Sequence record: MK250029.1
Reading direction: 5' to 3' (one strand)
Length of the DNA stretch: 64,000 nt
A model generated the notes under the pieces. It saw only the letters and a program-made list of their open reading frames with translations. It made no database searches and was not told the origin of the DNA. Both the position numbers and the translations under genes were made by a program. Positions 20,378 to 64,000 of this stretch are shown here, one piece after another (the stretch's first letter is position 1; the number at the start of each line of letters is the position of its first letter).

Positions 20378-20399
20378 ATAATTTATATATCAATTTATA

Positions 20400-20612: not shown

Positions 20613-20694
20613 AACAAATCTTATTTAAACATTATATAACGAAGATACATATTTTATATTAAAAAAGAAAGGATACTAACTTAAATTAGTATCC

Positions 20695-21081: not shown

Positions 21082-21098
21082 TTTATTAAATTATCCTT

Positions 21099-21833
21099 TT
21101 AATTATTTATTACTTGTTCTGTTTTTAACTCAATAATTATATCTTCTTTTATAAATAAAACATTATTATCATCTATATCTAAATATTCAATATTTTTAAT
21201 AGTATTCACAAAATTATGAACAAACGTATTTAATATAGATATATCTGTATCTTCTATTCTAAATAGAAATTTAGATAATTCTGGATATGCTAATGATATT
21301 TCTTTCTTTGTAAAATATTCATCACCATTTATTAAGCCTAAACATTGTCCAGATTGAAATGCAATTAATTTTAATATATCTTCTTTTGACATATTATTAT
21401 TTAATGTTGTGAAATCTATTGTTGTTAAATCAATATTTAATAATGTATTTAATCTACAATCAAAGTCACTACGTAATGCGAGTTTTACTTCTGATCTATA
21501 TTGAGATCTAGATAAATGAGATAAAATAGAACGTATAGAGCGTACTATCTTTAATGGTATATTGCGTTTTACATTTTTTGTAATTAATAAAGGAGTAGTC
21601 TGATGATGTAAAGAATATGTATTTTTAATAGCATTATTTAATTCATCTTTTGTTCCTTTATAACAATTAGAAATAATACCATCATCAATAGTTATTAAAT
21701 TTCTATTTTCATTTTTATCAGATGAACAAAATATCTTACATTCATTTAATGACGATAATTTATCTACAATATATGCTATGTCTATATCAGTTGAATCAGA
21801 TGAACCATATATATAATTTCCATATATTTCCAT
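21099..21833 (-). CDS. Pol-beta-superfamily nucleotidyltransferase-like protein
   Basis: YIYGSSDSTDIDIAYIV (hG[GS]..DxD) motif. Confidence 0.6.
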   Translation of the reverse strand: MEIYGNYIYGSSDSTDIDIAYIVDKLSSLNECKIFCSSDKNENRNLITIDDGIISNCYKGTKDELNNAIKNTYSLHHQTTPLLITKNVKRNIPLKIVRSIRSILSHLSRSQYRSEVKLALRSDFDCRLNTLLNIDLTTIDFTTLNNNMSKEDILKLIAFQSGQCLGLINGDEYFTKKEISLAYPELSKFLFRIEDTDISILNTFVHNFVNTIKNIEYLDIDDNNVLFIKEDIIIELKTEQVINN

Positions 21834-21838
21834 TTTAA

Positions 21839-22105
21839 TTATTCTAAATTAATTTGCTTAAATATTAAATAATTCTCTAAATCTATAAGAGTCTGTAACG
21901 ATTCATCAAAGTATTGATGATCATAATTTTCATCATTTCTTGCATGCAAATCTATTAAAGCTTCATGAAATCTTGAATCCGGATATTTCTCAAAATACTT
22001 CTTCAAAATTTCCAAAATTTTCATATTACTTTCATAACGTTTACTTCTGTAATATTCAAACATCTTCTGCTCTGACTCATTTCTTTTTATATCATTCTCT
22101 ACCAT
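21839..22105 (-). CDS. Hypothetical protein
   Basis: 88-aa ORF. Confidence 0.5.
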   Translation of the reverse strand: MVENDIKRNESEQKMFEYYRSKRYESNMKILEILKKYFEKYPDSRFHEALIDLHARNDENYDHQYFDESLQTLIDLENYLIFKQINLE

Positions 22106-22134
22106 AATTATAATTTATAAAATTAAATTATTAG

Positions 22135-22998
22135 TTATATACTTATATCTTTTATTTCTCTATCTAATGATATACATTTAGGATCTATATTTTCATATGT
22201 AAAAACACTATTCTATCCTTTTGGATCATCAAAGAATCTATACATAGTTGCTTTATTTCCTTCAATATAAGAACCTCTTGTTTTTAAATCTATCTTTAAT
22301 ATTACTGCATTATTTATATTTTGTTTATTCTTAAATAAATCTTTTGCATAACTTTCCAATTTATTATAATTATATTTTAAATAAAAATAAACTCTATCTG
22401 GATAATTATCACCATTAAATTGTTTAGATCTCGGTATTAACCCATTTTTCTATATTTTCTAATATGTTTTATAATCAGTTATATGGTATAAAATACCATC
22501 ACATTCCTTATATACATAATCAGTTAATTCATATATAAATTTTGGATGTAACATAAATACATAGTTATCATTCTATCGTTCTTTTACCGCAATAAAATAT
22601 CCTAAATTATAAATAATAGATTCTAGATTTATTAATGCATCTTTATTATATTCATCATCATAATCATCACAATATATATAAAAATATAATAATGGCGTTT
22701 TATCTTTCTATAATGGATTATAATCAATTCCAGCATGATGAATAAAACCATCAAAATATTTTTTTAGTTTAGATAATGCTTTATTCGGATCCATTGTATG
22801 TAATAAACCTTCATACAAATAATTTTGTTCACATTTTTTTAAGTAACTATATTGACATGTATCTTCTATACCATATTTTAGTTGATTATATGGCTAAAAC
22901 CATATATTATCTTTTGAATATTCTCTTAATGCATTATCATAATAATTAAATTTCATTTCAAATAAGGTTTTACCTATCAATCTATCATAACTATCCAT
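22135..22998 (-). CDS. Protein with C-terminal ADP-ribosyltransferase/Tpt1(KptA)-like domain (287 aa, code 15)
   Basis: ATG 22998 to TAA 22135, open only with TAG=Gln. LYHIT...IQKNGLIPRSK...YPDRVYF...VILKIDL...TYENIDP pattern. Confidence 0.5.
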
Positions 22999-22999
22999 A

Positions 23000-23989
23000 T
23001 TATTTGTGAAATTTATTATATATTATTTTCTATATATTCTACTTGAACTTCTTATAATTAGTCTATAATTCAAATATCATCGCTTGAAATTTATCTTTAT
23101 CATCCTATGTATATTCAGAAAATCTAGGTCTATAATCAAAATGATATTCGTTAATCTTATATTTTACTAAATGATATTTATAACATGAATAATTAAATAT
23201 TTCCATAGGACCAAAATTATTTGAAACATATATAGTTCTTAACATATTAATATATTTTTTCATTTCTGATAATAATGTTATATCATTCAATGAATCAATA
23301 TCTTCATCTTCAGATTTAACATGTTCATATACAGCATTTAATCTTGCACGCTCTTCCGATTTATTAAATATATAACATAATCTCTAACTTTTTTCAAAAT
23401 ACATATTATCCCATATAAATGGATTCGTTTCATCATCCGGTAATCTATTTTTCTCTGATTTTAAAACGTCTTTATCTTCCAATGCATACATTTCTCTTAT
23501 ATGTAAAAATTCATGCTTACATGAATCTCGCAATAACTATATATTATTCTATATCATATATGAATTTAGATAAATAACTATTTCATTATCATCTTTATCT
23601 TCACTTTTTATATATGAATAAGAAGTTGATTTTATATCATTTAATATATAAACATATATAGGATATTTTATATTTTCATTATCTACTTTTTTACATAAAG
23701 AATTTTTAATATTATAGTTATATCCTGTATATACTTTTATATCTCTACTTATATCTATATTATCTTTATAAATATCTTCTATAACATCTATAACTTCATC
23801 AAATACATCACTTATATGGTATTCTTCATTTATGATATTAAGCATGTCGTCATCATCATTATATTGATATTGTAATCTTCTTTCATACGACCAATTAAAA
23901 TTACCACGTAAATGTCTATAATTATTTTCATATAATTTTTTTTCATTATGAAAATAATATTCAACTAATTCCTTTACATATTTGTTCAT
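23000..23989 (-). CDS. HExxH metalloprotease-like protein (329 aa, code 15)
   Basis: Listed 23549..23989 and 23105..23290 are one frame joined via TAG. KHEFLH plus downstream EERARLNA. Confidence 0.55.
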
Positions 23990-24075
23990 ATTAAAACAAA
24001 ATTAATTTCAATATTTATAAAAAATAAAATAAGTTATAAAATTACAGGATAATTTTATAACTTATTGATAATTAG

Positions 24076-24165
24076 AGGAAGAAGTGGGATTCGAACCCAC
24101 GAACCGATATTAAACGATTTCGGGTTTTCAAGACCCGCGCATTCGACCAGCTCTGCCATCCTTCC
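24076..24165 (-). tRNA. tRNA-Ser(TGA)
   Basis: GGAAGGA/TTCTTCC; CGGGT-CT TGA AA-ACCCG; long variable arm; GGTTCGAATCC. Confidence 0.92.
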
Positions 24166-24307
24166 AAATAAAAAATTAGGATTTATATTCTGTGAGAATC
24201 CTTTAACTCAATACCAATACGATGGTCTCCAAGACTTTCCATTAAATAAATTTAATGTTCTTGTAGTTACGATTCTATATCATAGTAATATAGACTATTA
24301 ATAATTG

Positions 24308-24378
24308 TTGCAACTAACGGAATCGAACCGCTTACTCTCTCGCATGATGAGAATGTGTTGCCATTACACCAAGATGCA
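24308..24378 (-). tRNA. tRNA(CAT), atypical (A32, acceptor mismatch)
   Basis: TGCATCT/AGTTGCA; TTCTC-AT CAT GC-GAGAG; GGTTCGATTCC. Confidence 0.6.
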
Positions 24379-24500
24379 TGCAGAGTTTTATCGACCGCTT
24401 ATTATCTCTGTCATTCATATTTCCCCATTTATAATATTACTTTATAGATACACAATCGCGAACAGTTATCTATATTCATAAAATAAACGTATCATACTAG

Positions 24501-24574
24501 TTGCGCACTCCTGAACTCGAATCAGGGACCTCCAGGTTATGAGCCTGGCGAGCTACCAACTGCTCCAAGGCGCG
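24501..24574 (-). tRNA. Initiator-like tRNA-fMet(CAT)
   Basis: CGCG start with C1 mismatch; GAGCAGTTGGTAGCTC D-arm; CCAGG-CT CAT AA-CCTGG. Confidence 0.8.
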
Positions 24575-24918
24575 ATATATAAAAACATAAAAATAATAAT
24601 GAATTCATAGATGGATTCCTGACTACCATCAAACCTCATTACATATTAAGCACATTATTCAGTCACTACAAGTTAGTTCATGACGCTAACTTTTTATGTA
24701 GGAAGGATTGATTACCTTCAAAGGCTACAGACATCATTCCATTAAAACGATTTGACCTTTCTTACGTCACTCACAGTTGGCCAACTGTGGTTATTTTAAC
24801 CTTATGCTTCTTAATATTGATTACTCTAAATCATATCTTTTCAGATATAACCTAAATGCCTTATTTACTGTCCACAAATTATTCAGCAATATAAAAACAT
24901 TATTAAGTTATGTTATTG

Positions 24919-24990
24919 AGCTCCGAGTCGGATTCGAACCAACGACCTGCTCATTACAAGTGAGCTGCACTACCACTGTGCTATCGGAGC
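24919..24990 (-). tRNA. tRNA-Thr(TGT)
   Basis: GCTCCGA/TCGGAGC; GCTCA-CT TGT AA-TGAGC. Confidence 0.93.
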
Positions 24991-25070
24991 ATAAATTTTA
25001 TTAACTTATTATTTATCTAATTTACTTTAAAAATTAATAATAAATCAAAAAAATATTTCATAATTATTTG

Positions 25071-25151
25071 TACCTTCACTCGGACTCGAACCGAGACGTA
25101 ATTAAACCTAGCTCCTTAGGCTAGTGACTATACCAATTCGTCTATGAAGGT
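25071..25151 (-). tRNA. tRNA-Leu(AAG), A34 anticodon
   Basis: ACCTTCA/TGAAGGT; CTAGC-CT AAG GA-GCTAG; class II arm; A73. Confidence 0.88.
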
Positions 25152-25226
25152 ATTAAAATTAGTTTCATAAAGAAACTTTTTATTTAATAACGTAAATTTA
25201 AAATAATTTATTTTTAACTATTTTAG

Positions 25227-25300
25227 TAGTGCGTACCGGGATCGAACCGGTGAAATACCAGCGTGAAAAACTGGCGACTTAACCACTTGTCAAACGCACC
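25227..25300 (-). tRNA. tRNA-Glu(TTC)
   Basis: GGTGCGT/ACGCACT; CCAGT-TT TTC AC-GCTGG. Confidence 0.92.
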
Positions 25301-25383
25301 AAATTTTTTTAAAATACATTATATTATATATAACTTTTTAAATAAAGTCTATATATTTATTAAAAATATTTTCAAAATATTTG

Positions 25384-25487
25384 TGGGAACAACAGGATTC
25401 GAACACTGTGACGTAAGATCATTTCAACCGGTTTGTAAATACAACCCACTTACCATGGGTCTCTCACACCAACGAGAAGGTATTCCC
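25384..25487 (-). ncRNA. Aberrant tRNA-like RNA (104 nt)
   Basis: GGGAATA/TGTTCCC acceptor, TCTCG/TGAGA stem, ACCCA-TGGTAAG-TGGGT hairpin (G at position 33), very long variable region, bulged T-arm with TTCGAAT. Confidence 0.5.
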
Positions 25488-25492
25488 AAATA

Positions 25493-26143
25493 TTATAATT
25501 TATTTATATATTCCTTTAATTCTTTCGCTTTATATGGTAATTCATATTTTTTACACCATTTCTTTATAGCATTACCAGAAATACCATATAATCTTCCAAT
25601 ATTTTCAAATGTAATATATTTCCTAAATAATTCTATTAACTCTTCTTTTGAAGGAATAATATAATTTTTATTGGTTTTTATATTATCAGATATTTTATTA
25701 TACTAACTAATTATAGAATTGTCTTTAAATTTATATATTAAATTATTAACAGCATTATCATCTTTTATAATTTCTGTTGGACATTCTAGTAAATTACTAT
25801 GTATTTCTCGATGACAATTAGAACATACTAATACACATTTATCTAATTCAGTTTTTACTTTATTCCAACTTCTAGTATAACCTCTACTTCCTATTGCAAA
25901 ATCTTTCTATTCAGGATTAATATGATGAAATTCTAATGCTGAAATACATTTATTATAACCACAACATTGACATCTATTCCCTTTATATGCTAATGCTAAT
26001 AGTTTTATATGATCTCTTCGTTTCTAAACATATTCAGACTAACATTTCATGCATTTCCAATGAATTGAATTATCATAAAAATACTATTTAAATAAAGTAT
26101 TCCCATGCTTTTTGCATATACGATATTCTTTTATATCACTCAT
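25493..26143 (-). CDS. HNH homing endonuclease with C-terminal HTH (216 aa, code 15)
   Basis: CQCCGY...ALEFHHINP...CVLVCSNCHREIH; 5 TAG. Confidence 0.8.
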
Positions 26144-26147
26144 ATTG

Positions 26148-26221
26148 CGCTTCGGAATGGACTCGAACCATTGACTTTCTGATTAACAGTCAGACGTTCT
26201 AACCAACTGAACTACCGAAGC
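26148..26221 (-). tRNA. tRNA-Asn(GTT)
   Basis: GCTTCGG/CCGAAGC; TCTGA-CT GTT AA-TCAGA; G73. Confidence 0.94.
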
Positions 26222-26625
26222 AAATATTGAATAGTTTATCTTCGGACACTATTCATAATTATTAAAATTCAGTCATATACTTACCGAGAATTATATATGC
26301 ACTATATCATGAAAGTTTATTCATAATGGCACTACTTATCATGATTAAAACCATATTCAACTTTGGTAACTAATATTCATATAGGAAAAATATCTTACCA
26401 TCTCATCTTAAATATATGGTTGAATAACATATATTCATAATTATTTTTTAGAACCTATATTAAAATCAAAAAATGCATATCATTATTATAAGAAATAATT
26501 AAAACTTATAATAAAGTCTCGAGCTATGCGCAATATCTTTATAAAAAATGTAAATATAAAACAGATAATACTGAATAACATATACATTTTATAACTGTTT
26601 CATACATTTATAACCATTGTAATTG

Positions 26626-26713
26626 TGATCCCACCAGGACTCGAACCTGGAAGTCCTTTTACGGAACACAGTTTAGAAGACTGTTGAGGTCATCCATTAC
26701 TCTTTATGGGACC
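26626..26713 (-). tRNA. tRNA-Arg(TCT) with long variable arm
   Basis: GGTCCCA/TGGGATC; ACAGT-CT TCT AA-ACTGT; 17-nt variable region GTTCCGTAAAAGGACTT. Confidence 0.8.
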
Positions 26714-26745
26714 TAAATATCAACATAGATATGTTAAATAAGTTG

Positions 26746-26819
26746 CGGTACGTACGAGATTCGAACTCGTGACTTCTACAGTGACAGTGTAGCGCTCTGA
26801 CCAACTGAACTAACGCACC
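26746..26819 (-). tRNA. tRNA-Asp(GTC)
   Basis: GGTGCGT/ACGTACC; CTACA-CT GTC AC-TGTAG; G73. Confidence 0.94.
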
Positions 26820-26822
26820 AAA

Positions 26823-27467
26823 TTAAATATTTTTATTTAAATATTGTTCAATTTTTTCTTTATTATTTTCATACCATCCTAACTATCTATTACATACAGA
26901 ACATAATAAACCTCTAAATTTTAATGTTTCATGATTATGATCAATACATAAATGCTTAGGTGCACTTTTTGATTTCCACTTTACACAATCATCTATTGTT
27001 CTTCCACAAATTTCACATGTTTTATGTTCTTCTCTATATTTTTCTAATTCATATTTAGTAATATCTAATATATCTCCATTTCGCATTTTTACTTTATCTG
27101 TAAACTATTTTGATATATATACCGGTTTATTACCATTATTACAAATAGAATTATATCTATTAGGATTTTCTTTACAATACATCATATGATATTTAAGGCC
27201 ATATTCAGTATATTCTTTACCACAAAATTCACATTTTACAAGTTTCTAATTACTAAAACGACCATCCTAATCTTCTTTAAATTTAATAGAATTTTTTAAA
27301 CTAGTAGATATTTTATCTTTCGTTTCTTGCGTCACTATATGAGAATTTGCACATGAACGAGAACAATATTTTTTATATTTTCCTTTTTGATAATTATTTT
27401 CTGTACATTCTATCTCAAACTATTTTCCACATTTTTTACATTCTATTACATATTTTTTTAATTCCAT
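26823..27467 (-). CDS. Endonuclease VII-type His-Me finger homing endonuclease (214 aa, code 15)
   Basis: N-terminal Zn-finger repeats (CKKCG, CSRSCAN, CEFCG); C-term CEICG...LCIDHNHETLKFRGLLCSVCN. Confidence 0.78.
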
Positions 27468-27708
27468 AAAAGATTCACTATTTTTTCAGAAGTCATTTAT
27501 ATATTAAGTATTTGAGTTATTAAATATATTCCAAAAATATATTAATCACTTTGTAAACATTATTATTATAAAAATAAGTTTGCTGTATTGACTTCCATAT
27601 TCATAAACAAATCTCATTAAACACTTACATTTCTTACTAATAAAAGTCTCATTGTAAGTCAAATACTTCAATTATTATTTATGAATTATTATATTATTTA
27701 AATTTGTG

Positions 27709-27783
27709 TGGGCCCAGTAGGACTTGAACCTACGACCTTCAGATTATGAGTCTGCTGCTGCTAACCGTCTGAGCTATAGGCCC
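27709..27783 (-). tRNA. tRNA-Ile2/Met(CAT)
   Basis: GGGCCTA/TGGGCCC; GCAGA-CT CAT AA-TCTGA; A73. Confidence 0.88.
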
Positions 27784-27850
27784 AAATAATATATTTTTAT
27801 ATTATGTAATTAAAATATCTATATTATTAATATTAAAATTTAATTTATAG

Positions 27851-27923
27851 TGTTCCGTACGAGACTCGAACTCGTTACCCCGATATTAAAAGTATCGTGC
27901 TCTGCCAGATGAGCTAACGGAAC
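27851..27923 (-). tRNA. tRNA-Lys(TTT)
   Basis: GTTCCGT/ACGGAAC; CGATA-CT TTT AA-TATCG. Confidence 0.93.
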
Positions 27924-27933
27924 CGCATATTAA

Positions 27934-28752
27934 TTACATAACCTAATATAATTTATCTAATCGTTCATTATATCTCCAAAATTGACAATGTAATTTATTT
28001 ATAATATTATTCTAACGAATTATATCTTTATCTGATAAAATATTATTATATACATCTTTATAATGTTTAGGTTCATCATATTCAAATACAATATTTTTTT
28101 CTTTATCATATCCATCAAGAAAATAACCTAAAATCTCACATTCACCACCATTTCCGTAATACTATAAATTCCAGTTATTTTCTTTATTTAATTTTTCTAT
28201 ATATTCTCCAGAATTTTTATTAAATCGTGGATTGTGAAATCCTTTATTCTTTTTCAAATATTCAATTGCACCTAATCGCTATTTATATTTATGATCTTCT
28301 GTATGATGTGTACCTAAATTATAGGGTATATTTTTACCAGACATATAATTCTATCTAATTGTAATTGATTGCTATTTTACGCTATCACTTGTTTTTATAG
28401 TTAAACCTTTATTCCATGCAATATGTCCTTTTGTTGCTCCATTATTGCCATGATGTATTTCTCTATTAGGATTCATATGACAATATCTTTCATGATATTT
28501 TATACCATAAATTGAATATAAATTATTACAAAACTAACAATTAACTTTCTAACAATTAATTTTCTTTATCTTAAAATCTTTCTATTTAAACTATAAATCA
28601 ATATTATATTTTTCAACTATTATTTTTAAATAATTTATATTTCCTGAATTCTAATAACAATTTAACTATCGCAAACAATCATTATATGATGTACAATTAT
28701 TTAATTTCTAAATAATTTCATTATCACTAATCTATTTAATATTATTTTTCAT
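27934..28752 (-). CDS. Homing-type endonuclease, C-terminal PD-(D/E)XK/Vsr-like domain (272 aa, code 15)
   Basis: Over 10 in-frame TAG. AWNKGLT and LGTHHTE NUMOD-like repeats; YFLDGYDKEKNIVFEYDEPKH. Confidence 0.7.
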
Positions 28753-28837
28753 GTTTTCAAAGAACTAAATACATAATATTATATGTAAAACTTAAAATAA
28801 AGTCTATTTTTAATAGATTATTTTTTAAATTATTTTG

Positions 28838-28911
28838 TTGGGTGAGTGAGACTTGAACTCACGACCTCTTGCTTATCAGGCAAGCTATCTAACCAGCTGA
28901 TATACCACCCA
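28838..28911 (-). tRNA. tRNA-Ile(GAT)
   Basis: TGGGTGG/TCACCCA; CTTGC-CT GAT AA-GCAAG. Confidence 0.92.
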
Positions 28912-28916
28912 AAATT

Positions 28917-29179
28917 AAAACAAGTAGATTTACGAGACACAGCTTCTTCACCCTTTATAAAGGAAACTCGCTATTAGGCACTTGCGCTGTTTTACGAAGT
29001 TGTTGTGTGTCAACTTATGGCTTCTCACGAAATTTGCTGCTCTTCACATCTATGATCGAAATCAAACCAATTCTTTTCAATAATTGACCTGTAACCCTTA
29101 TCAGTTCTTCAGTATATAACATAAGCTAGCATTACTATACACTTACTCATTATTATAATCAGAAGTCTATACTTGTTTT
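28917..29179 (-). ncRNA. Candidate structured ncRNA (~260 nt) between tRNAs
   Basis: Closing stem AAAACAAGTA/TACTTGTTTT; GC-rich interior with no credible ORF. Confidence 0.35.
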
Positions 29180-29182
29180 TAG

Positions 29183-29265
29183 TAGAGATAAAGGGACTCG
29201 AACCCTTACACTTCAACAGTATATGCTCCTAAGGCATACGTGGCTACCAATTACACCATATCTCT
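29183..29265 (-). tRNA. tRNA-Leu(TAG)
   Basis: AGAGATA/TATCTCT; TATGC-CT TAG GA-GCATA; class II arm. Confidence 0.92.
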
Positions 29266-29271
29266 AAAATG

Positions 29272-29425
29272 TGGACCCTCGTGGAATCGAACCACGACCT
29301 CTGGATTGTCTCTATAAATGGGATCGAACCATTAATAATAACCATTAATATTATAGAGATTGATTTAATACAGTTTACTCTGTTAATTCAGTCCAGCGTA
29401 CAGGCACCAGCCATACGCAAGGTCC
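29272..29425 (-). tRNA. tRNA-Phe(GAA) interrupted by a ~79-nt anticodon-loop intron (29308..29386) containing a tRNA-like module
   Basis: GGACCTT/AGGGTCC; CTGGA-CT GAA [intron] AA-TCCAG; CGTGG-TTCGATT-CCACG. Removing the intron leaves 75 nt. An alternative junction would give GAC (Val). Confidence 0.75.
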
Positions 29426-29434
29426 ATTTATGTG

Positions 29435-29514
29435 TTGCGGGTCTTAGAGTCGCACTAAGTATCGCATAGCTTATGAGACTAGCATGATTTATATATCTGT
29501 TTCACTCCCCCGCA
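29435..29514 (-). tRNA. tRNA-Met(CAT), atypical
   Basis: TGCGGGG/ACCCGCA; CTAGT-CT CAT AA-GCTAT; long D-loop; T-loop TGCGACT. Confidence 0.7.
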
Positions 29515-30415
29515 ATATTATATTGTTATTTTTTAAATAATTTATAAAAATATTAAACTATTCATTTACAAATGCTTTATTATATTTTCCCATATCTTTT
29601 ATTACATATGGTATCCATCCACATTTTTTTATTTCATTTATTTTTATATTATCTCTATTCTATACTTGTTTTACTGAATGCTATTTTTTTATTTGCTCAT
29701 AATGCCATTTACCATTCCATAAAATTGCATATTTTATTTTTGGTAAAATTATATCTGCATCCCAACCATTAAAAATTGGTTTATTATGAAAAACATTTTC
29801 TATATTAAAAAAATTTTCGCATAATGTACAAAATAATTTTTCATTTTTTGAACGACGCTATTCACTTTGAATATTGCAACTATGCTTACCGCCATTAGAT
29901 ATTTTTTTAAGTGCATCTTGTGATAAAAAATCTCGAAAATGTAACTAATAATATTCTCTACATTTTTCTGAACACATTTTTCTTGTGCATCCTATAATAT
30001 CTTTAAAATAAAAATACTATTTATTACAAACTATACATGTATATAATTTTCTATTAGAATTATGATTCTTTTTAACACTAATAGATGTTTTCTTTTTTGA
30101 TTCTTCTGACCGCGGAGCTCTATGTAAATTTCCATATGCAGTAGCACATTGTTTATTACAAAATCTACCTGAGCCGTAAGAACCATCTATTACTTTACCA
30201 CAATTTTCACAATATAAAATTTTACTTTCTTCTAATTGTTTCTGTTGTAATAAATATTCATTCTTTATCTTATTATAATCGATATTTCTTTTCTATAATA
30301 ATCGTCTAAATGTATTATTAGTTAAATTATATTTTTTATCTACATATCTTAATGAATAATTACAATCCTTATATATCTATATTAATTCATTATTTGTTAA
30401 TCCTTTAATATTCAT
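29489..30415 (-). CDS. Homing-type endonuclease, PD-(D/E)XK-like (308 aa, code 15)
   Basis: CENCG..GSYGSGRFCNKQCA Zn finger; GWDADIILPKIKYAILWNGKWH. The 3' end overlaps the adjacent tRNA by ~26 nt. Confidence 0.7.
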
Positions 30416-30754
30416 AACTAAATTAATTAATAATTTATTGGACTAAAAACATACTCAAATAGTTACAAAAACTATTATGTTAATAATCTATTTAAATAAT
30501 AGGTAATTTTCACTGGTTATATTTAAACTATTCCATTGTCCTCAGCTATCTAACGTTCTTTTTCTTTCTAACCCAAATGATTAATTTTAAGGTAATTACG
30601 CTATTTAATAGCGTCACTGAGAGTTGTTTAGAACCTATACTTTATTTGTCAGATTTAGAGATTCGAACTCCTTAGACTTATTCCCGCGCGTCCTATTCAT
30701 CAATCTACCCATCTGTAGAAATACAGTTCCCACACTGTAAGTCACCTGTAATTG

Positions 30755-30825
30755 TTGGACTAGTAGGACTCGAACCTACTCAAATAGCGTCAAAGGCTAT
30801 TGTGCTGCCATTACACCATAGTCCA
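30755..30825 (-). tRNA. tRNA-Gln(TTG)
   Basis: TGGACTA/TAGTCCA; ATAGC-CT TTG AC-GCTAT. Confidence 0.93.
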
Positions 30826-30842
30826 GTATTTATATCACATAG

Positions 30843-31079
30843 CGGTTGTAATTGGATTCGAACCAATAATCTACCCACGACCTTGGGTCATTCTACGAGT
30901 AAACGATAATTTTTTTATTCATTATAAGCAAATAATTATAAAATCAATAACGGTATAAGAGCTTAAGATTAATACCATTCGATCCGCAAACATCTCATAT
31001 TAATTATTATAATATTCGAAATAAATATTCATTTTAATTACCAGTTTTAACTACTCCACCTGTTTTGAACTATACAACC
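30843..31079 (-). ncRNA. tRNA-like RNA (237 nt) with ~155-nt insertion in the D-loop
   Basis: GGTTGTA/TACAACC-G; GTTC..GAAT D-stem split by an insert closed by GAGTA/TACTC; ACCCA-AGGTCG-TGGGT (6-nt loop); ATTGG-TTCGAAT-CCAAT. Confidence 0.55.
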
Positions 31080-31219
31080 ATATTATTAAAAATAGACGTT
31101 CCTATCTGATTTGCACAGCACCCTATACCATAATGATATAGATTCTAACTATTAAACTATCAGAACATTAAATATACTTAATAACTAGTATATAAAAATA
31201 TATCCTCTATTTTTATTTC

Positions 31220-31630
31220 TTAATTTGATGGATGATAATAATCTTTCCAATTATTAAATGTATTCTTTATTGATAAATTTTGTAAATATTCAACAGAATA
31301 ACATTTATTAGTATGTATTATTCTATGATGATTTGGACATACAATAATTAAATTTGAAACATTATCAGTTCCACCATTACATTTCTCAATTATATGATGA
31401 ATATCACATGTTGATTCATTCCAACCACATATTGCACAACCTATTTTAGAACGATTTAAAATCTTTGATATTGTTCTTTTTGAACAATCTAATATAGAAT
31501 TTATTTCTTGTTCTTTTGAATGTTTTCTATGTTGTTTACATTCATCACATCTTATATGCCTATCTTTACGGATTGCCTTATTAGTTAAAAAAGATTTTCC
31601 ACATATTTCACATATATACTAATATTCCAT
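31220..31630 (-). CDS. HNH endonuclease (136 aa, code 15)
   Basis: CAICGW...CDIHHIIEKCNGGTDNVSNLIIVCPNHHRIIH; TAG at codon 4. Confidence 0.85.
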
Positions 31631-31637
31631 AATAATG

Positions 31638-31720
31638 TGGGTGAGGCAGGACTCGAACCTGCGAAGTCAAATGACAGCTGATTTACAGTCAGCCCCCTTT
31701 GCCACTCGGGACACTCACCC
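31638..31720 (-). tRNA. tRNA-Tyr(GTA)
   Basis: GGGTGAG/CTCACCC; GCTGA-CT GTA AA-TCAGC; class II arm. Confidence 0.95.
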
Positions 31721-32065
31721 AAATTAATGAAATATTTCGAAGAAATTGCATCTTCTAATAATCTTACAGCTTACCTTTTAGGTTTTTTAATAGCATGCCT
31801 GTTACTTCACAGGAACAAAATATTTCATTAAAAATTACCCGAAACATTCAATGTCGTCACAGTCACATCTATAGGATTTAAAAATAGATTCTAACCAGAA
31901 AGAGTTTGCTCTACATCATCAGATTTATTTTATATTTAGACTTAATAATAAATCCTACATACTTACCATATAACTCTTTTATTTAATAGTCATATAAATA
32001 CACTGCCTAATAATATAAGTATACAACTATTACTGTAATGTTTCACACAAGACGTTCCTTTTATA

Positions 32066-32965
32066 TTATTTTTTAAATATTATATCAAATTTTGAAAATA
32101 TATCATAATTTATTTTATTTGGATATTCTCCATATTTCTATGTCCATATATTAATCTTATTTTTTAATTCATCTAATGATATATCACATTTTATACTTTT
32201 TGATGCATTTAAGCTATGCTACATTAACTAACAATTTGCTGGATGTGATATTAAATAAGGATCTATTAATTCTTTATATCCTTCATTACGTGAAAATATA
32301 TGATCTCTAGAAACACCATTTAAATTATTACCTGCATTTTTTGGTTTATACCAGCCATATAATGTTATTTGATTAAAATCAAATTCTTTTGGATAACTAT
32401 TTAATGCAAATTTAAATTTACACTAATTATTATATAACTATTTTAAAGTTTTATTTTCAACACGATAACGGCTATTATGTGCACATGAATTACTACAAAA
32501 TTTCTATTTTCTTCTCTTACTTTCAAATACTTTTCCGCAATATTCACATATATGAATATGTGTTGCATGTATTGCACATGTTGTATTTGTTACATGTTTT
32601 GTATATTTTATATTATTACATTTATTTGATAATGTTTTAGAAATTTTCTAATTTTTCTAATTTAAATTTGTATGTGCATTCGTTAATTTTCTTGCGCACT
32701 ATGTTGAACATGTCTACTTATACTTATTTAATGCATACATATTTGGAGTAACATATACTTTATATTCATTATTACATATAACACAATTACATGTATATTC
32801 TTTACGTTTACGGTGATTATGCATTTTTTCTTTTGTATTCTAAAGTATTTCTTCATACTTTGGATTTTTATTACACCAACGTACATGATTTGCATATGAC
32901 TTTATATTCATATACTAAGTTTCTCCACAATAAGGACACTTCTTTTCAATTTTTAATAATTCCAT
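32066..32965 (-). CDS. HNH homing endonuclease with Zn-finger repeats (299 aa, code 15)
   Basis: CPYCG, CEYCG..FCSNSCA; VSRDHIFS...SHPANCQLMQHSLNASK; over 10 TAG. Confidence 0.75.
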
Positions 32966-33248
32966 ATTTTTTAACTTTATTTTTAAAAGGTGACTGGAAT
33001 CACCTTTATATTATATTATTTATTAATAATTAAATAAAGTTAGATAAACCTGGAATTCGTTTATCAAATGGTTCCAGCCATCTGTCCTTTATTTAATGTA
33101 TTAAATATTTCTCTGTTTTAAGAGTAATATTTATATTTGAAAAACATTATATTGTCTATTCAAATAATAAAAAATTGTTCACATAGGTAAATTTGAAACA
33201 CTAATTTTTAGATTTAACTTTACCATAACTAAACTATATGTGAACACA

Positions 33249-33326
33249 TGGTAGGTTATGAGGAACTCGAATCCCCGACCCTCTCCTTGTAAGGGAGATG
33301 CTCTAAACCGACTGAGCTAATAACCT
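33249..33326 (-). tRNA. tRNA-Val(TAC), CCA encoded
   Basis: AGGTTAT/ATAACCT-A-CCA; TCTCC-CT TAC AA-GGAGA. Confidence 0.94.
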
Positions 33327-33396
33327 AAACTAGTATACTGCTTTCCCAAGTGGTATACTATGAAATAATTCACAAATCCGATTTTATGAATTTAAA

Positions 33397-33572
33397 AATT
33401 AAATAGTTAATTAGGGTGGATTTGCACTTCCCTTACTCCATAGCTAAATGTTAATGATGGACCCTTCTTACTAATGAATAAAAGAAAATTGCGCAAGTTT
33501 TTATTCATTAATATGTTTAGTTCTACATAACGTAGCTCTCTACTTACCGTTAAACTTCGTTACTATTTAATT
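33397..33572 (-). ncRNA. Candidate structured ncRNA (~176 nt)
   Basis: 11-bp closing stem AATTAAATAGT/ACTATTTAATT; internal AATGAATAAAA/TTTTATTCATT and CTAC/GTAG hairpins. Confidence 0.35.
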
Positions 33573-33681
33573 AAAAACGTTTAAAAATATATTCAGAAAT
33601 TTAATATATATTCGCCTCGACGATACTATCTGAACATAGAAGGTACATCCTTTATACATACTAAATCATATTTTTAAATTG

Positions 33682-33845
33682 CGGGAATAGAGGGAATCGA
33701 ACCCACGCCCAGAGATTAGCTACATAAATTGGATTCGAACCAATTAAACTTTATAAAGTATGATACCCAACAGCATTATGTAGTTTAATTTAATCAGGTT
33801 GTTTCCTGTATACAGTCTCTTGCTCGACCTTCGAGCTATATTCCC
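33682..33845 (-). tRNA. tRNA-Asn(GTT) interrupted by a ~93-nt anticodon intron (33719..33811) containing a tRNA-like module
   Basis: GGGAATA/TATTCCC-G73; GCTC-GAAGGTC-GAGC; AGAGA-CT GT[intron]T AA-TCTCT. Removing the intron leaves 71 nt. An alternative junction would give GTA (Tyr). Confidence 0.75.
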
Positions 33846-34471
33846 AACTTTTGCATTAAGGTCAGCAAACCACACATCTCGCTGTCATATAAGCATCCAC
33901 GATTACTATCGTTCCATGTATACAACCATATCCAGCCTGTGCGAATATTTGTTCTATTTGGCTCGTGGCGATATTCTTTTCGAAAGCAATAGCAAATATT
34001 AAAAGGACTTTAATATTCTATAATATCGCCTGATGCACTTTGGACAAGCAGTATAATATAAGAAATCTTATATATAGCCTGATATATTTCAATCATATTT
34101 TTCTTTGGCAGCATCATTCTATAAATTCATATAATTATTGTTTTCTTCCTCACATAAGTAAAATACTTATGAAGTTACTTTTCAATAAAGTTCATAGTAT
34201 ATCTGATTAACTTTTCAGTAACAGAAACATTTATTATATGAATAATACTTATATTTGTCTATCAAAATTTCAAAGAACAATATATTTTTTAATTAACAAT
34301 ACAAAGATACATCTTTATTTTGAATTAAAAAAATATTCATTGAAATTTTTGAAATATTTTTTTGTTTATTATCAATATGTCAAAGAACTAAATGTTTGTT
34401 ATTTTATTAACAACACAAAGATACATTATATATTTCAAATAAAAAAATAAGTCTATAAAAAATTGATATTT

Positions 34472-34720
34472 TTATTTAATTTTTATAATTGTATCTTCTT
34501 TAATAGAACGTCTAATCCATCTCATTAGGATTATTGCTCTATCATAATGTGGTAAGAATGAAGCAGTTTCACCTACATCATGTTTATCTGATAAATCGAT
34601 TTCAAACTAATATACATGATTATCAGTTGATGTAATATTATAAACTGCAATTCCTCCAGCATTCATACAAACAAGGTCTGCTGCACCTTTAACTAAAATT
34701 TTTAAATCAATGTTTTCCAT
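34472..34720 (-). CDS. Hypothetical protein (82 aa, code 15)
   Basis: ATG 34720 to TAA 34472 with one TAG; ends ILMRWIRRSIK. Confidence 0.55.
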
Positions 34721-34743
34721 TTTTAATTAATTTTCTTTTTTAG

Positions 34744-34816
34744 TTGGGGTGGTGGGAGTTGAACCCACTACCAGAATTTTATAAGAATTCCACTCTAACC
34801 GTTGAGTTACACCCCA
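34744..34816 (-). tRNA. tRNA-Ile(TAT)
   Basis: TGGGGTG/CACCCCA; GAATT-CT TAT AA-AATTC; GGTTCAACTCC. Confidence 0.9.
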
Positions 34817-35006
34817 ATATGGGATGTTCCTAAATATAATACAACATTATATCATTAAACATATAGGAACATAATTTCTATTGTTAATCCTATATATAAT
34901 AATGTATATAAGATCAACAATTATAATATTCGATGCTTATGTATATGTCGTATTAAATTTGTCATAACTTTATTCTTATAAAATTTGTTTGTATTCTTTT
35001 AATTTG

Positions 35007-35097
35007 CACACAGAGAAGGATTCGAACCCTCGAACAGACTGTTAAATCCGTTATTGGTTTTGGAGACCAACTGCATCAACCACTCGCACATCTGTGT
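35007..35097 (-). tRNA. tRNA with CCA (Trp) anticodon and Ser-like class II body
   Basis: ACACAGA/TCTGTGT-G73; TTGGT-CT CCA AA-ACCAA; 7-bp variable stem AACGGAT/GTCTGTT. Confidence 0.82.
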
Positions 35098-61005: not shown

Positions 61006-62349
61006 AAAGATATTGAAATTGATGGTTGTATAGTATGTCATTCTATTGAAGATGCTATCAGTTATTCAAAAGAAATTAAAATGGATTCTGCATTCATTAT
61101 TGGTGGTGGATCTATTTATAAAGAAGCAATTAACAAAGATCTTATTGATATTTTATATATTGATTTTTTAAATACAGGTTTATCTGATGAAGATTTTGAT
61201 ACTTATTTTGAATTTCCTCCTGTTGAACAAACATATCGTACATGTGAAAATTTAACAGATTATAATCCAAATTCAAATATTAATCCGGTTATTTCATACA
61301 GAGAACGTACATTTGTTACAACTGATTATGATTATTTGTCATTAATGAATAAAATTATTAAAAATGGAAAAACAAAACATACACGTGCAGGTGAAACATT
61401 ATCTATTTTTGGTGAAATGCTTTCATTTGATTTAAGAAAAGGTTTACCTATTCTCACAACAAAGAAAGTGTATTCAAAAGGTTGTATTCATGAATTGTTA
61501 TGGATTTTACATGGTGATACAAATATAAAGTATCTTGTTGAAAATAATACTCATATATGGGATGATGATGCATACAGATATTATTTGCAGAAATTTGAAT
61601 CTGATAAAGATGTAAAGACAACAAAAGAACAGTTTATTAACCGTGTAATTAAACAGGATATTATTCATTATGTTGAAGATGGTGATATGAATAGCNNNNN
61701 NNNNNNNNNNNNNNNNNNNNNNNNNNNNNNNNNNNNNNNNNNNNNNNNNNNNNNNNNNNNNNNNNNNNNNNNNNNNNNNNNNNNNNNNNNNNNNNNNNNN
61801 NNNNNNNNNNNNNNNNNNNNNNNNNNNNNNNNNNNNNNNNNNNNNNNNNNNNNNNNNNNNNNNNNNNNTTGTCATTACTTATCACAATGGTATGTAACTG
61901 AAATGAATAACTATGAAAGAAATGAAGAATATCATAAAAGATATAATATCAATGTAGATGATAATAAACTATTATCTGATGAAGAATTAGATAAATTAGG
62001 AATTCCACATCAATATTTAAGCTGTATGTGGATGCAGAGATCTGTTGATACATGTTTAGGTTTACCATATGATTTATTGAGTTATTCTATATTAACTCAT
62101 CTTATTGCACAGATTTGTAATATGGTTCCTTATGAAGTTAAATGTTCACTTGGTGATTGTCATATATATAAGAACCAGTTATCCGGTGCAATTAAACAAA
62201 TTCAGAGAAATCCGTTTAAATATGAACCTGCACAACTTGTGCTTAATAAAGAAATTAAAGATATTAATGATTTTAAATATGATGATATTAAAATTGTAAA
62301 TTATAATTCATATTCAACAGTTAAATATCCACTTTCTGTTGGACTTTAA
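61006..62349 (+). CDS. thyA: Bifunctional dihydrofolate reductase-thymidylate synthase (5' end in N gap)
   Basis: DHFR C-term (VCHSIEDA..FIIGGGSIYK..DTYF) in frame with TS (LPILTTKKV..ELLWILHG, QRSVDTCLGLPYD, GDCHIYKNQ). Confidence 0.88.
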   Translation, partial: KDIEIDGCIVCHSIEDAISYSKEIKMDSAFIIGGGSIYKEAINKDLIDILYIDFLNTGLSDEDFDTYFEFPPVEQTYRTCENLTDYNPNSNINPVISYRERTFVTTDYDYLSLMNKIIKNGKTKHTRAGETLSIFGEMLSFDLRKGLPILTTKKVYSKGCIHELLWILHGDTNIKYLVENNTHIWDDDAYRYYLQKFESDKDVKTTKEQFINRVIKQDIIHYVEDGDMNSXXXXXXXXXXXXXXXXXXXXXXXXXXXXXXXXXXXXXXXXXXXXXXXXXXXXXXXXXXCHYLSQWYVTEMNNYERNEEYHKRYNINVDDNKLLSDEELDKLGIPHQYLSCMWMQRSVDTCLGLPYDLLSYSILTHLIAQICNMVPYEVKCSLGDCHIYKNQLSGAIKQIQRNPFKYEPAQLVLNKEIKDINDFKYDDIKIVNYNSYSTVKYPLSVGL

Positions 62350-62405
62350 AAAAATAAAGGTTGAAACATTCCAAAATGTTTCAACCTTTTATATTTAAAT
62401 ATATA

Positions 62406-63296
62406 TTATACTTCTAAAGCTAAGAAACCTAAGACAGGGTAGTCTGCATACTTACCGGTGTTGTAGACGCGTCCATCATCGAGACCGAAACTGCGCACAT
62501 CGTCTTTATCGTACTCTCTACTACTCCAATAATTGTTGTCCTCACTAAAACCACTACCTTTTATAGCTGTACGTTTTTCATTTATAACTGTTTTGTTTGC
62601 ATAAATTTGATATAATTCGCCAGGCATTGGTAAATACCAGTCACCGGATTTAGTACCAGGTGTTGAATATGCAACACAACAACATGCAGGTGCACAATAA
62701 CCTGCATCAGGATTATTTGTTACTCCATCACATATGTTCTAATCCTGATTTGTTGCTTTAGATAAACATTGTTGTGTATTCCATTTACCTCCTATATATG
62801 CAATTTTTTCAGTTCCACCCTTTACATTACCTACATCAACGCTATCATTTCCAAAATACATATCCACATCTTGTGGAAGTGGATTTCCATTTGCTGGTGT
62901 TTTATAATCCATATAATTTATAGAAACAAATCTGGCTGTTTTAACAGCACCCGTTGAATCATCACCATTTTTGAAGTTTTCAGTAACCTCGGGAATTACA
63001 CAAATTGCAATTGCAGTGTTATTCACATTATTTGTCTATGCATCAAGTGTTAACTTACCATCTGAAGTTGAATAAAGAATATCTGCAACAGCAGGTTTCT
63101 TTTTACTAGATGAAGCATCCAATTTAACTGGTTCCATATTTACTGAACCTAACATCAAACAATTAGGTCCAGGATGTCTTTCATCTATAAATTTAGTCGT
63201 CTAAGACTGATATACAAATGCACCATCTTTATGATGAATCTATAAAGCAGCTTCATTCATTAATTCATCAGTTGCAAACTATTTAATAAATTTCAT
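62406..63296 (-). CDS. DUF1566/C-type-lectin-fold protein, probable DGR target (296 aa, code 15)
   Basis: ATG 63296 with 5 TAG joins the listed fragments; GDWYLPMPGELYQIY...NNYWSSREY...VLGFLAL. Confidence 0.72.
62425..62560 (-). other. Putative DGR variable region (VR)
   Basis: Abrupt switch to NNC codons (GAC AAC TAC GAC CGC TTC CTC CGC GTC TAC AAC ACC GAC TAC GTC TTC) at the 3' end of a CLec gene in an AT-rich genome. Confidence 0.6.
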
Positions 63297-63436
63297 AAAT
63301 AATATATTTTTTATTATATTTATACTGACAATTACTAACTTTTATGGAATCTTATAACTTTATAAACATAACTAAATAGAATATTTCATAATTAAGTTAT
63401 ATTTTTATAAAAACTTAATATTTTATCAAATTTCTA

Positions 63437-63940
63437 TCAATTTAATCCTATTTTCTTCAGTTTTTCATATAAATTTTGATAAAATTTTTCAACCAGTATA
63501 ATATATCTTGAATTACCATTTTCATCTATAATTTCATTAAAATAATCAGAATATTTTTCAACAATTTGTTTTACATATTCACTTTCATTATTTTTATAAA
63601 TTACATATTGTGCATCAACTTCTTGTTTAGCATTTCTTGGACAATTAGTCTTTGTATAGTGTGAACATTCCCAATCGATAATAGTTGCTTCATAATCATA
63701 ATTATCACATTTATGATATTTTCCCATTTGTAAAAAATAATATTCTGGATGATGTTTATTATGAAATCTATGAAATTTCTGTAATGTTTTATATGGTACT
63801 ATTAATTTAAGAAATGGTTTTTCCATATCATGAAACAGATATTTAAATTTCCAGCATTTTTGATTTAATGCAACCATATTAAATGAACACCAGTGTGCAA
63901 ACCAATATTTAAATGAACTTCTTTCTGCTTTATCAAACAT
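63437..63940 (-). CDS. HD-like domain protein
   Basis: LFHDMEK...FHRFHNKHHPEY...IIDWECSH..TK; paralogous to 11418..11801. Confidence 0.5.
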   Translation of the reverse strand: MFDKAERSSFKYWFAHWCSFNMVALNQKCWKFKYLFHDMEKPFLKLIVPYKTLQKFHRFHNKHHPEYYFLQMGKYHKCDNYDYEATIIDWECSHYTKTNCPRNAKQEVDAQYVIYKNNESEYVKQIVEKYSDYFNEIIDENGNSRYIILVEKFYQNLYEKLKKIGLN

Positions 63941-64000
63941 AATTTTATATTTTATTTTTAAAAATTAAAAGGAAGATTCCAAATATATTACAATATTAGA

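What the first reader, a model, noticed from the sequence alone, without database searches (positions are those of the whole stretch)
62406..62627. Fingerprint of a diversity-generating retroelement in a CLec gene
Seen: the last ~45 codons switch to GC-rich NNC codons inside a YWSS-type CLec domain. Established: DGR template repeats are AAC-rich and adenine mutagenesis yields NNC codons in C-terminal variable regions. Inferred: a hypervariable ligand-binding protein whose TR and RT lie outside this window (remote target), possibly for host-range diversification.
Basis: partly seen in the sequence, partly recalled or inferred. Interest (0 to 1): 0.65.

Follow-up and report, generated by a model that had tools for sequence, protein, structure and literature searches.

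The report
Fossil DGR variable region, Lak megaphage
The GC-rich tail of this lectin-like gene in the gut megaphage Lak-C1 carries the mark of a diversity-generating retroelement, but that retroelement survives only in sister genomes, so here the variable region is a frozen leftover.

Summary
The window is Prevotella phage Lak-C1 (MK250029.1), which reads TAG as Gln. The flagged 73-codon ORF is the tail of a 296-codon gene (62406-63296, minus strand) with a C-terminal Lcl_C/C-type-lectin-like domain. Its last ~37 variable codons are 41% NNC, against 4% in the rest of the gene.

The DGR origin is supported by a sister megaphage (IMG/VR, 553,716 bp). It carries a DGR reverse transcriptase (IGNLTSQ, YVDD) and a 138-nt AAC-rich template repeat. 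Six variable regions in paralogous genes differ from that template almost only at its adenines (16-26 of 56 A sites; 0-7 of 82 non-A sites). Two of the six sit in tandem genes syntenic with the window's gene. The window's region aligns in register with the template and differs at 24/56 A sites and 12/82 non-A sites.

Lak-C1 has no reverse transcriptase and no template anywhere. The 5.75-kb cassette is cleanly absent. Eight of nine natural variants of the protein share an identical variable region while differing elsewhere.

Verdict: an orphan, frozen DGR target. The "active remote target" reading is not supported for this genome. I found no paper in the held library that describes DGRs in Lak megaphages. 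Read-level variation could not be tested.

The parts
62406..63296 (-). Target-type gene, 296 codons plus TAA, read with TAG = Gln (in-frame TAG at codons 6, 19, 32, 87, 186). The product is a two-part protein. Residues ~58-296 resemble a Bacteroides fimbrial protein, and the C-terminal ~130 residues form an Lcl_C/C-type-lectin-like domain.
   Evidence: frame, TAG positions; 814 homologues, full-length ones at 45-69% identity; pLDDT 92.3; 4eps Z 15.6; 8q4e Z 11.5
62417..62557 (-). Stretch homologous to the DGR template repeat of the sister genome, i.e. the variable region in the broad sense. The diverged codons lie between 62436 and 62546. There is one 3-nt insertion relative to the template.
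   Evidence: aligned over 138 nt; mismatches at 24/56 template adenines and 12/82 other positions (p 3e-4). NNC enrichment.
62417..62435 (-). Invariant 3' end of the variable region (GTCTTAGGTTTCTTAGCTT, encoding V-LGFLA). It is identical in the template and in nearly every VR recovered (only the G002 218-kb VR shows substitutions there). It occupies the position of an IMH-like homing boundary. Homology to the template stops exactly here.
62356..62389. Perfect 14-bp stem with a 6-nt loop, 27 nt beyond the end of template homology, between two convergent genes. It is terminator-like. Every VR of the family listed has a strong hairpin 2-41 nt downstream, and the template does not.
62406..62627 (-). 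The finding's own coordinates: the table-11 ORF (73 aa, from Met224). It is an artefact of reading TAG as stop.

Best explanation
The gene at 62406-63296 (minus strand, TAG = Gln) is one of four paralogous genes in Lak-C1 that encode adhesin-like proteins ending in an Lcl_C/C-type-lectin-like domain.

Shown: in the ancestor, and still in some sister megaphages, a DGR cassette rewrites the last ~40 codons of these genes. The cassette holds a candidate accessory gene, a 138-nt AAC-rich template repeat and a 676-aa reverse transcriptase. Template adenines are replaced at random, so AAC codons become NNC codons.

Shown: Lak-C1 has lost the whole 5.75-kb cassette. Its variable regions therefore keep the scar of adenine mutagenesis (NNC codons, high GC, mismatches concentrated at template A positions) but are no longer diversified. 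They now evolve by ordinary point substitution.

Inferred, not shown: the protein is probably a late-expressed surface or receptor-binding protein, and its binding face was tuned by the DGR.
For: (1) The sister genome IMGVR_UViG_3300045988_166570 is the nearest record held. Its syntenic segments are 93-98% identical to Lak-C1. It has an RVT_1 hit in a 676-aa ORF with IGNLTSQ and YVDD motifs. Its nearest GenBank relatives are phage RTs, led by the Bacteroides uniformis phages F1/F2/F4, which the literature describes as DGR-bearing (PMC8143477).

(2) That genome has one template and six VRs. Mismatches are 16-26 of 56 at A sites and 0-7 of 82 at non-A sites (Fisher p between about 2e-10 and 3e-6; counts recomputed). 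Two of the six lie in tandem genes syntenic with the window's gene.

(3) The window's VR aligns in register with that template: 24/56 A sites and 12/82 non-A sites differ (p 3e-4). The non-VR part of the same gene shows no A bias (14-17% at A versus 17-20% at non-A).

(4) All 15 NNC codons align with NNC codons of the template (codon comparison read from those alignments). NNC enrichment has p 7e-9.

(5) Lak-C1 has no RT, no RT remnant and no template. The template search used blastn on the full record, an adenine-wildcard scan of the whole genome and the sister template as query.

(6) The cassette's flanking genes are 98-99% identical in protein and directly adjacent in Lak-C1. The junction lies at record positions 148764/148780.

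(7) Intermediate states exist. Contigs L060 and L066 keep the cis target plus only the last 37-40 RT codons, so the cassette decays by deletion.

(8) There is a decay gradient at non-A sites. Contigs with the RT or with it freshly deleted have 0-2 mismatches (one G002 VR has 7), and the other metagenome VRs have 0-6. Lak-C1 has 10-12, Lak-A1 13, Lak-A2 20/76 and a further relative 31/80.

(9) Eight of nine natural protein variants (93-100% identical, about 25 contigs in all) have an identical VR while differing at 1-9 residues elsewhere. Two Lak-A1 records share one VR.
Against: The window's VR has 12 non-A mismatches to the only template allele recovered. It was therefore not written from exactly that template. 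Either it has drifted or it came from an unseen template allele; one metagenome VR (L059) shares the non-A motif CGCAGTTTC with the window.

The independence of the ~25 contigs carrying the frozen VR is not documented.

Absence of the cassette rests on a curated metagenome-assembled genome. A minority subpopulation that carries the cassette cannot be excluded.

The accessory (Avd-like) role of the 131-aa ORF has no support from any profile.
Confidence: 0.8

Rival explanations
1. Active remote target: the VR is still diversified by a DGR encoded elsewhere in the same genome.
For: In the sister genome the syntenic genes are remote targets of a DGR that lies far away on the 553,716-bp contig. The window's VR keeps the invariant 3' boundary and a downstream hairpin.
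Against: There is no RVT_1 match at E<=1 in the whole 540,217-bp record, and the control genomes ring. There is no RT remnant by tblastn and no template. The cassette site is empty. The VR is identical in eight of nine natural variants.
Confidence: 0.04
2. Trans-diversification: Lak-C1 lacks the DGR, but its orphan VRs are occasionally rewritten during co-infection by DGR-bearing Lak relatives, or refreshed by recombination with them.
For: The 19-nt 3' boundary of the VR is identical to that of the template. Full, RT-deleted and cassette-less alleles of the locus all occur in public gut metagenome assemblies. VRs with pristine non-A positions also occur in assemblies whose cis locus has lost the RT (L060, L062, L066).
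Against: Twelve non-A mismatches to a template that is conserved in two independent DGR-bearing genomes (one change in 150 nt) show that this template has not recently overwritten the VR. The VR is invariant across natural variants. The pristine VRs in RT-deleted contigs are equally explained by recent loss.
Confidence: 0.1
3. No DGR ever acted here: the C-terminal loops are simply a fast-evolving binding site, shaped by positive selection and gene conversion among paralogues, and the resemblance to the template reflects common descent.
For: Orthologues in Lak-A1 and Lak-A2 differ by indels (12 nt) and third-position changes that a DGR does not make. Non-A divergence of the VR (15%) equals the background divergence of the gene (17-20%).
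Against: Selection on amino acids does not explain synonymous choice. In a 26% GC genome where 3.5% of codons end in C, 41% do so here, and each aligns with an NNC codon of the template. The excess of mismatches is specific to template adenines.
Confidence: 0.05

Closest known systems
Bordetella phage BPP-1 DGR (Brt reverse transcriptase, TR, Mtd variable region); the prototype, from established knowledge
   Same: The VR occupies the last ~40 codons of a C-type-lectin-fold protein. The template is AAC-rich. Changes are confined to template adenines. There is an invariant 3' boundary followed by a hairpin. The RT has the IGxxxSQ and YxDD motifs (seen in the sister genome). Bordetella phage RTs are among the tblastn matches.
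   Different: In Lak-C1 the RT and the template are absent. In the sister megaphage there are six targets rather than one; the RT is 676 aa with a long C-terminal extension found in no GenBank phage (no match covers 80% or more of it); its mRNA needs TAG read as Gln; and no Avd homologue is detectable.
Multi-target DGRs with remote VRs (e.g. Treponema denticola TvpA paralogues, Legionella LdtA); from established knowledge, not tested here
   Same: One template serves several paralogous CLec-fold genes scattered in the genome (six in the sister genome).
   Different: Those are bacterial chromosomal or island systems with FGE-type CLec domains and lipoprotein signals. Here the carrier is a 540-550-kb phage, the domain is Lcl_C type, and the window's genome retains only the targets.
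Pfam PF07603 Lcl_C (formerly DUF1566), structure 8q4e (Legionella Lcl C-terminal domain); also 4eps, Bacteroides ovatus fimbrial protein BACOVA_04982
   Same: The fold matches: Z 11.5 over 125 residues to 8q4e, and Z 15.6 over 194 residues to 4eps. The GDWYLP and YWSS motifs are shared with homologues that pass the Pfam threshold.
   Different: The window's own protein scores below the Pfam gathering threshold (19.2 against 34.9 bits). It has no collagen-like or pilin-assembly parts. Its ligand is unknown.
DGRs of Bacteroides uniformis phages F1/F2/F4 (PMC8143477)
   Same: These are the nearest named reverse transcriptases in GenBank phages (33-35% identity over residues 4-394). They are gut Bacteroidota phages.
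   Different: They are small siphoviruses (30-40 kb) using the standard code, and each carries its own RT. No published account of a DGR in Lak megaphages turned up.

Membership tests
Diversity-generating retroelement (complete system in this genome) | A DGR-clade reverse transcriptase encoded in the same genome | tested here: not met
   No RVT_1 match at E<=1 in the whole Lak-C1 record, and the control genomes ring. tblastn with the sister RT gives only a chance 37-aa hit (E 0.21). The feature is met in the sister genome G002 and in contig L058.
Diversity-generating retroelement (complete system in this genome) | A template repeat that pairs with the VR and differs from it only at template adenines | tested here: not met
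   No template in the window or in the genome. Against the sister template, mismatches are A-biased but not A-exclusive (24/56 against 12/82).
Diversity-generating retroelement (complete system in this genome) | Population-level hypervariability confined to the VR | tested here: not met
   Eight of nine natural variants have an identical VR, and the variation lies elsewhere in the protein. Two Lak-A1 records share one VR. The read-level test was not possible.
DGR target gene / variable region (by descent) | VR at the C-terminus of a C-type-lectin-fold domain, in register with a bona fide template, with an NNC codon signature | tested here: met
   The syntenic genes in the sister genome are VRs with 0-2 non-A mismatches.
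DGR target gene / variable region (by descent) | Conserved 3' boundary (IMH-like) and a downstream hairpin | tested here: met
   The 19-nt boundary is identical to the template. A 14-bp hairpin lies at 62356-62389. Its function in homing was not tested, and it may be only a terminator.
DGR accessory protein Avd | A small helical protein encoded next to the template | tested here: inconclusive
   A 131-aa ORF lies upstream of the template in the sister genome, but it has no significant hit in Pfam, NCBIfam or PDB sequences. It is absent from Lak-C1.
Pfam PF07603 Lcl_C (DUF1566) | A score above the family's gathering threshold | tested here: not met
   19.2 bits against a cut-off of 34.9, E 1.6e-3. 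However, 29 of 49 homologues match at E<=1e-3 (best 2.3e-11).
Pfam PF07603 Lcl_C (DUF1566) | The fold of the Lcl C-terminal domain (C-type-lectin-like) | tested here: met
   AF2 model with pLDDT 92.3. Foldseek E 3.2e-4 and VIA Z 11.5 to 8q4e. C-type lectin domains score Z 6-7.5.

The most novel reading that the evidence does not exclude
In Lak megaphages the DGR is a dispensable cassette that is polymorphic in the population. Genomes without it, such as Lak-C1, keep homing-competent orphan VRs, with an intact 3' boundary and hairpin. Those VRs could be re-diversified in trans, or replaced by recombination, whenever a DGR-bearing relative co-infects the same Prevotella cell. One retroelement would then serve a whole phage population and up to six or more lectin-like genes per genome.
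Probability: 0.1. Interest if true: 0.7.

Novelty: new member of a known kind. Interest (0 to 1): 0.45.

Why it matters
The result explains an odd GC-rich, NNC-rich gene tail in a 26% GC megaphage.

It also shows that the Lak group, the largest known human-gut phages, includes genomes with a six-target DGR. That DGR's own reverse transcriptase needs TAG read as Gln. I found no paper in the held library that describes this.

The locus shows three states side by side: a full cassette, a cassette with the RT deleted, and no cassette at all. The fossil variable regions decay in step with these states. This makes a natural series for dating DGR loss, and for asking whether orphan targets stay functional.

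For annotation, it marks four Lak-C1 genes as candidate receptor-binding or adhesion proteins.

Tried and rejected
- The VR pattern scan of viral contigs returned only the sister genome. A close-relative scan with the RT returned only the same record.
- The 73-aa table-11 fragment is not in the protein collection.
- Cluster 2 (P0005) was aligned in the hope of a positive control for VR-restricted variation. It is another mostly stable lineage and uninformative.
- The 131-aa ORF next to the template could not be shown to be Avd.
- I guessed that the 462-aa ORF replacing the RT, template and 131-aa ORF in contig L060 was a TnpB-like transposon nuclease. Pfam gives nothing, so the guess is dropped.
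- The in-frame TAG positions of the window's gene fall in unconserved columns, so they do not identify the residue. TAG = Gln rests on the RT motif, the tRNA-CTA genes and PMC6784885.
- No whole genome is held for the window. I rebuilt Lak-C1 for local scans from record stretches outside the window plus the window itself, keeping its N runs. Loci that overlap the masked stretches (L007, L065, L002) were used only for coordinates and identity figures, and their letters under the N runs were neither printed nor used.

Full report
**What the window is**

Window 62300-64000 is 100% identical to Prevotella phage Lak-C1 (MK250029.1), a 540,217-bp circular genome from human faeces. A window position x is record position x + 431,205. 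GC is 26%. Lak phages are published as using code 15, TAG = Gln (PMC6784885). The genome shows this itself. Lak-C1 has two tRNA genes with a CTA anticodon. The gene studied here has five in-frame TAG codons and gives a full-length, confidently folded product. In a sister genome the invariant Gln of the reverse-transcriptase motif IGNLTSQ is a TAG codon.

**Check of the observation**

The ORF at 62406-62627 (73 aa under table 11) is the tail of a 296-codon gene at 62406-63296 on the minus strand.

- In residues 252-288, 15 of 37 codons end in C. In the rest of the gene 11 of 251 do (p 7e-9). In the window's long ORFs 3.5% do.
- GC of 62426-62545 is 47%, against a window mean of 26%.
- YWSS is at residues 256-259.

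So the codon switch is real and not due to chance.

**The protein**

Pfam gives only a weak Lcl_C (formerly DUF1566) match (E 1.6e-3, below cut-off). PHROGs gives a family of unknown function.

A scan of 1.84 billion cluster representatives finds 814 relatives. Some are full-length, at 45-69% identity. Many share only the C-terminal ~130 residues. Of 49 chosen homologues, 29 match Lcl_C, with a best E of 2.3e-11.

The AlphaFold2 model built on that alignment has pLDDT 92.3 and pTM 0.86. Its best structural matches are:

- a Bacteroides ovatus fimbrial protein (4eps, Z 15.6, 194 residues aligned);
- the Legionella Lcl C-terminal domain (8q4e, Z 11.5);
- the Bdellovibrio Bd2740 C-terminal domain (Z 9.0);
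- dozens of C-type lectin-like domains (Z 6-7.5).

The "CLec domain" of the finding is therefore confirmed at fold level. The variable stretch covers the last three or four strands of that domain.

**No DGR in this genome**

- No template-like repeat exists in the window, by blastn or by a scan that treats template adenines as wildcards.
- The full Lak-C1 record has no RVT_1 match at E<=1, and the control genomes ring.
- blastn of the VR against the unmasked record finds only three paralogous gene tails, at record 284.7 kb, 285.5 kb and 366 kb.
- I rebuilt the genome from stretches outside the window plus the window with its N runs kept. The adenine-wildcard scan of that genome gives only self, paralogues and noise (about 80 of 100 positions).

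**A real DGR in a sister genome**

The same RVT_1 search on relatives gave one hit. It lies in IMGVR_UViG_3300045988_166570 (553,716 bp, estimated 100% complete), the nearest record held to the window (43% of its 31-mers shared). This is the Lak-like genome mentioned in PMC8241571.

In locus L003 the gene order is as follows:

| Element | L003 coordinates | Note |
|---|---|---|
| Target gene | 10001-10912 (+) | 63% identical to the window's protein |
| RT gene | 11020-13050 (-) | 676 aa; AIGNLTSQ and YVDD motifs; four in-frame TAG |
| Template | 13103-13240 (-) | AAC-rich |
| 131-aa ORF | 13485-13880 (-) | candidate accessory gene |

The RT passes the RVT_1 cut-off. Its nearest GenBank relatives are phage RTs, led by the Bacteroides uniformis phages F1/F2/F4, which the literature describes as DGR-bearing, together with Bordetella and Faecalibacterium phages. 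No Lak record is among them, and no record covers 80% of the protein.

The genome has one template and six VRs:

- Mismatches to the template are 16-26 of 56 A sites against 0-7 of 82 non-A sites (Fisher p between about 2e-10 and 3e-6; counts recomputed).
- Two VRs (contig 6911-7051 and 8059-8199) sit in tandem genes syntenic with the window's gene. One is syntenic with the Lak-C1 366-kb paralogue.
- Several VRs carry one extra codon within AAC runs.

A second, independent contig (L058) has the same cassette. Its RT is 97.6% identical, and its template differs at one base, inside the 3' boundary.

**The window's VR against that template**

The window's VR aligns in register from GTAGTGGTTT to CTTAGGTTTCTTAGCTT (62417-62557), with one 3-nt insertion.

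- Differences fall at 24 of 56 template adenines and 12 of 82 other positions (odds ratio 4.4, p 3e-4).
- As a control, the non-VR 740 nt of the gene compared with the two syntenic sister copies show no A bias (14-17% at A against 17-20% at non-A).
- Every NNC codon of the window's VR aligns with an NNC codon of the template. These template codons are mostly AAC, plus ATC, GTC, CTC, TAC and GAC (read).

This nucleotide-level signature cannot come from selection on amino acids in a genome where C-ending codons are rare. It shows that the tail was once written from an AAC-rich template.

The non-A divergence (15%) equals the background divergence of the gene. So the last rewriting is about as old as the split from the sister copies, or it used a different template allele. 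One metagenome VR (L059) shares the non-A motif CGCAGTTTC with the window.

**Loss of the cassette**

The genes flanking the cassette in the sister genome are 98-99% identical in protein to two Lak-C1 genes that are directly adjacent. The 5,753-bp cassette (L003 9930-15682) corresponds to a 15-bp junction at record 148764/148780.

Metagenome contigs show an intermediate state. L066 and L060 keep the cis target and only the last 37-40 codons of the RT, with breakpoints within about 10 bp of each other. In L060 a 462-aa ORF with 12 in-frame TAG codons lies in place of the RT, the template and the 131-aa ORF.

Non-A mismatches of VRs to the template form a gradient:

| Source | Non-A mismatches |
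|---|---|
| Cassette-bearing (G002, L058) and freshly RT-deleted (L060, L066) contigs | 0-2 (one G002 VR has 7) |
| Other metagenome VRs | 0-6 |
| The four Lak-C1 VRs | 6-12 |
| Lak-A1 | 13 |
| Lak-A2 | 20 of 76 |
| A further relative | 31 of 80, with no A bias left |

Lak-A1 and Lak-A2 also lack an RT.

**Is the window's VR still changing?**

There is therefore no read-level evidence.

As a substitute I looked at the 90% identity cluster of the window's protein. It holds nine distinct 296-aa variants seen on about 25 contigs, including contigs of 434-544 kb. Eight of them have exactly the same VR while differing at 1-9 residues elsewhere. The ninth (93% identical) has eight scattered VR changes of ordinary kinds. 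Two Lak-A1 records share one VR. This is the opposite of what an active DGR produces.

The 69-kb contig L065 is 100% identical to the window over 2,145 nt and is not counted as independent.

**Mechanism and verdict**

Shown:
- the gene, its fold, the NNC scar and its register with a real template;
- the absence of RT and template from Lak-C1, and the empty cassette site;
- the invariance of the VR among natural variants.

Inferred:
- the ancestor carried the cassette, and Lak-C1 lost it by deletion; the truncated-RT alleles favour loss over gain;
- the protein is a late-expressed binding protein; it uses TAG codons, which in Lak phages mark mostly structural regions (PMC6784885), and it resembles fimbrial and lectin-type adhesins.

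Each VR of the family listed is followed by a strong hairpin 2-41 nt downstream. In the window this is a 14-bp stem at 62356-62389. It may serve homing, termination or both; this was not tested.

**Comparison and novelty**

In kind this is a classical DGR target: a C-terminal VR in a CLec fold, written from an AAC-rich template with adenine-specific changes. It is not a member of a complete DGR system in this genome, because three defining features were tested and not met.

No paper in the held library describes a DGR in Lak megaphages. The MGV paper ran DGRscan on its catalogue, which includes the sister genome, but does not report on it.

I rate the finding a new member of a known kind, of moderate interest. 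The most novel reading still open is that orphan VRs are served in trans by cassette-bearing relatives.

Noticed in passing
L003:11023-13050 (-), sister genome IMGVR_UViG_3300045988_166570: The DGR reverse transcriptase has four in-frame TAG codons, and one of them encodes the invariant Gln of the IGNLTSQ motif. The enzyme can therefore be made only while TAG is read as Gln, which would tie diversification to the recoded (late) phase of infection.
   Followed up: partly
L049, L051-L054 (six VRs of the sister genome); L062, L066: Several VRs carry one extra in-frame codon (3 nt) relative to the template, mostly inside runs of AAC. This suggests slippage of the reverse transcriptase on the repeat. 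Codon insertions are not a classical DGR outcome.
   Followed up: no
L060:1417-2805 (+): In one metagenome contig the RT, the template and the 131-aa ORF are replaced by a 462-aa ORF with 12 in-frame TAG codons and no Pfam match. The breakpoints lie within about 10 bp of those of a clean 3.1-kb deletion in contig L066.
   Followed up: partly
L058:13442-13591 (-): The template of the second DGR-bearing contig is identical to the first except for one base inside the 3' boundary (TTAGCTT becomes TTAACTT). This is a template-specific difference at the spot where IMH and IMH* differ in the Bordetella phage system.
   Followed up: no
window 17975-35097 (-): A cluster of 19 tRNA genes lies on one strand. 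The two suppressor tRNA-CTA genes and a tRNA with a TTA anticodon lie outside the window (record 184533-184605, 185438-185512 and 254126-254198).
   Followed up: partly
Lak-C1 record 284.2-285.7 kb (outside the window; loci L008, L010): Two further orphan VR tails sit in tandem there, within longer open frames (575 and 678 codons when TAG is read through). The target domain is thus also found fused to larger proteins.
   Followed up: no
window 62868-62925 and alignment A1 columns 420-525: Lak-C1, Lak-A1 and Lak-A2 orthologues share a second, smaller variable patch with indels, in the middle of the gene (residues ~135-165). It is not covered by the template and remains unexplained.
   Followed up: no
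window 61081-62349 (+): The convergent neighbour looks like a fused dihydrofolate reductase / thymidylate synthase gene. This was judged by eye from the translation only, and the gene is partly masked by N runs, which were left untouched.
   Followed up: no
They were left out of all later searches.
   Followed up: no
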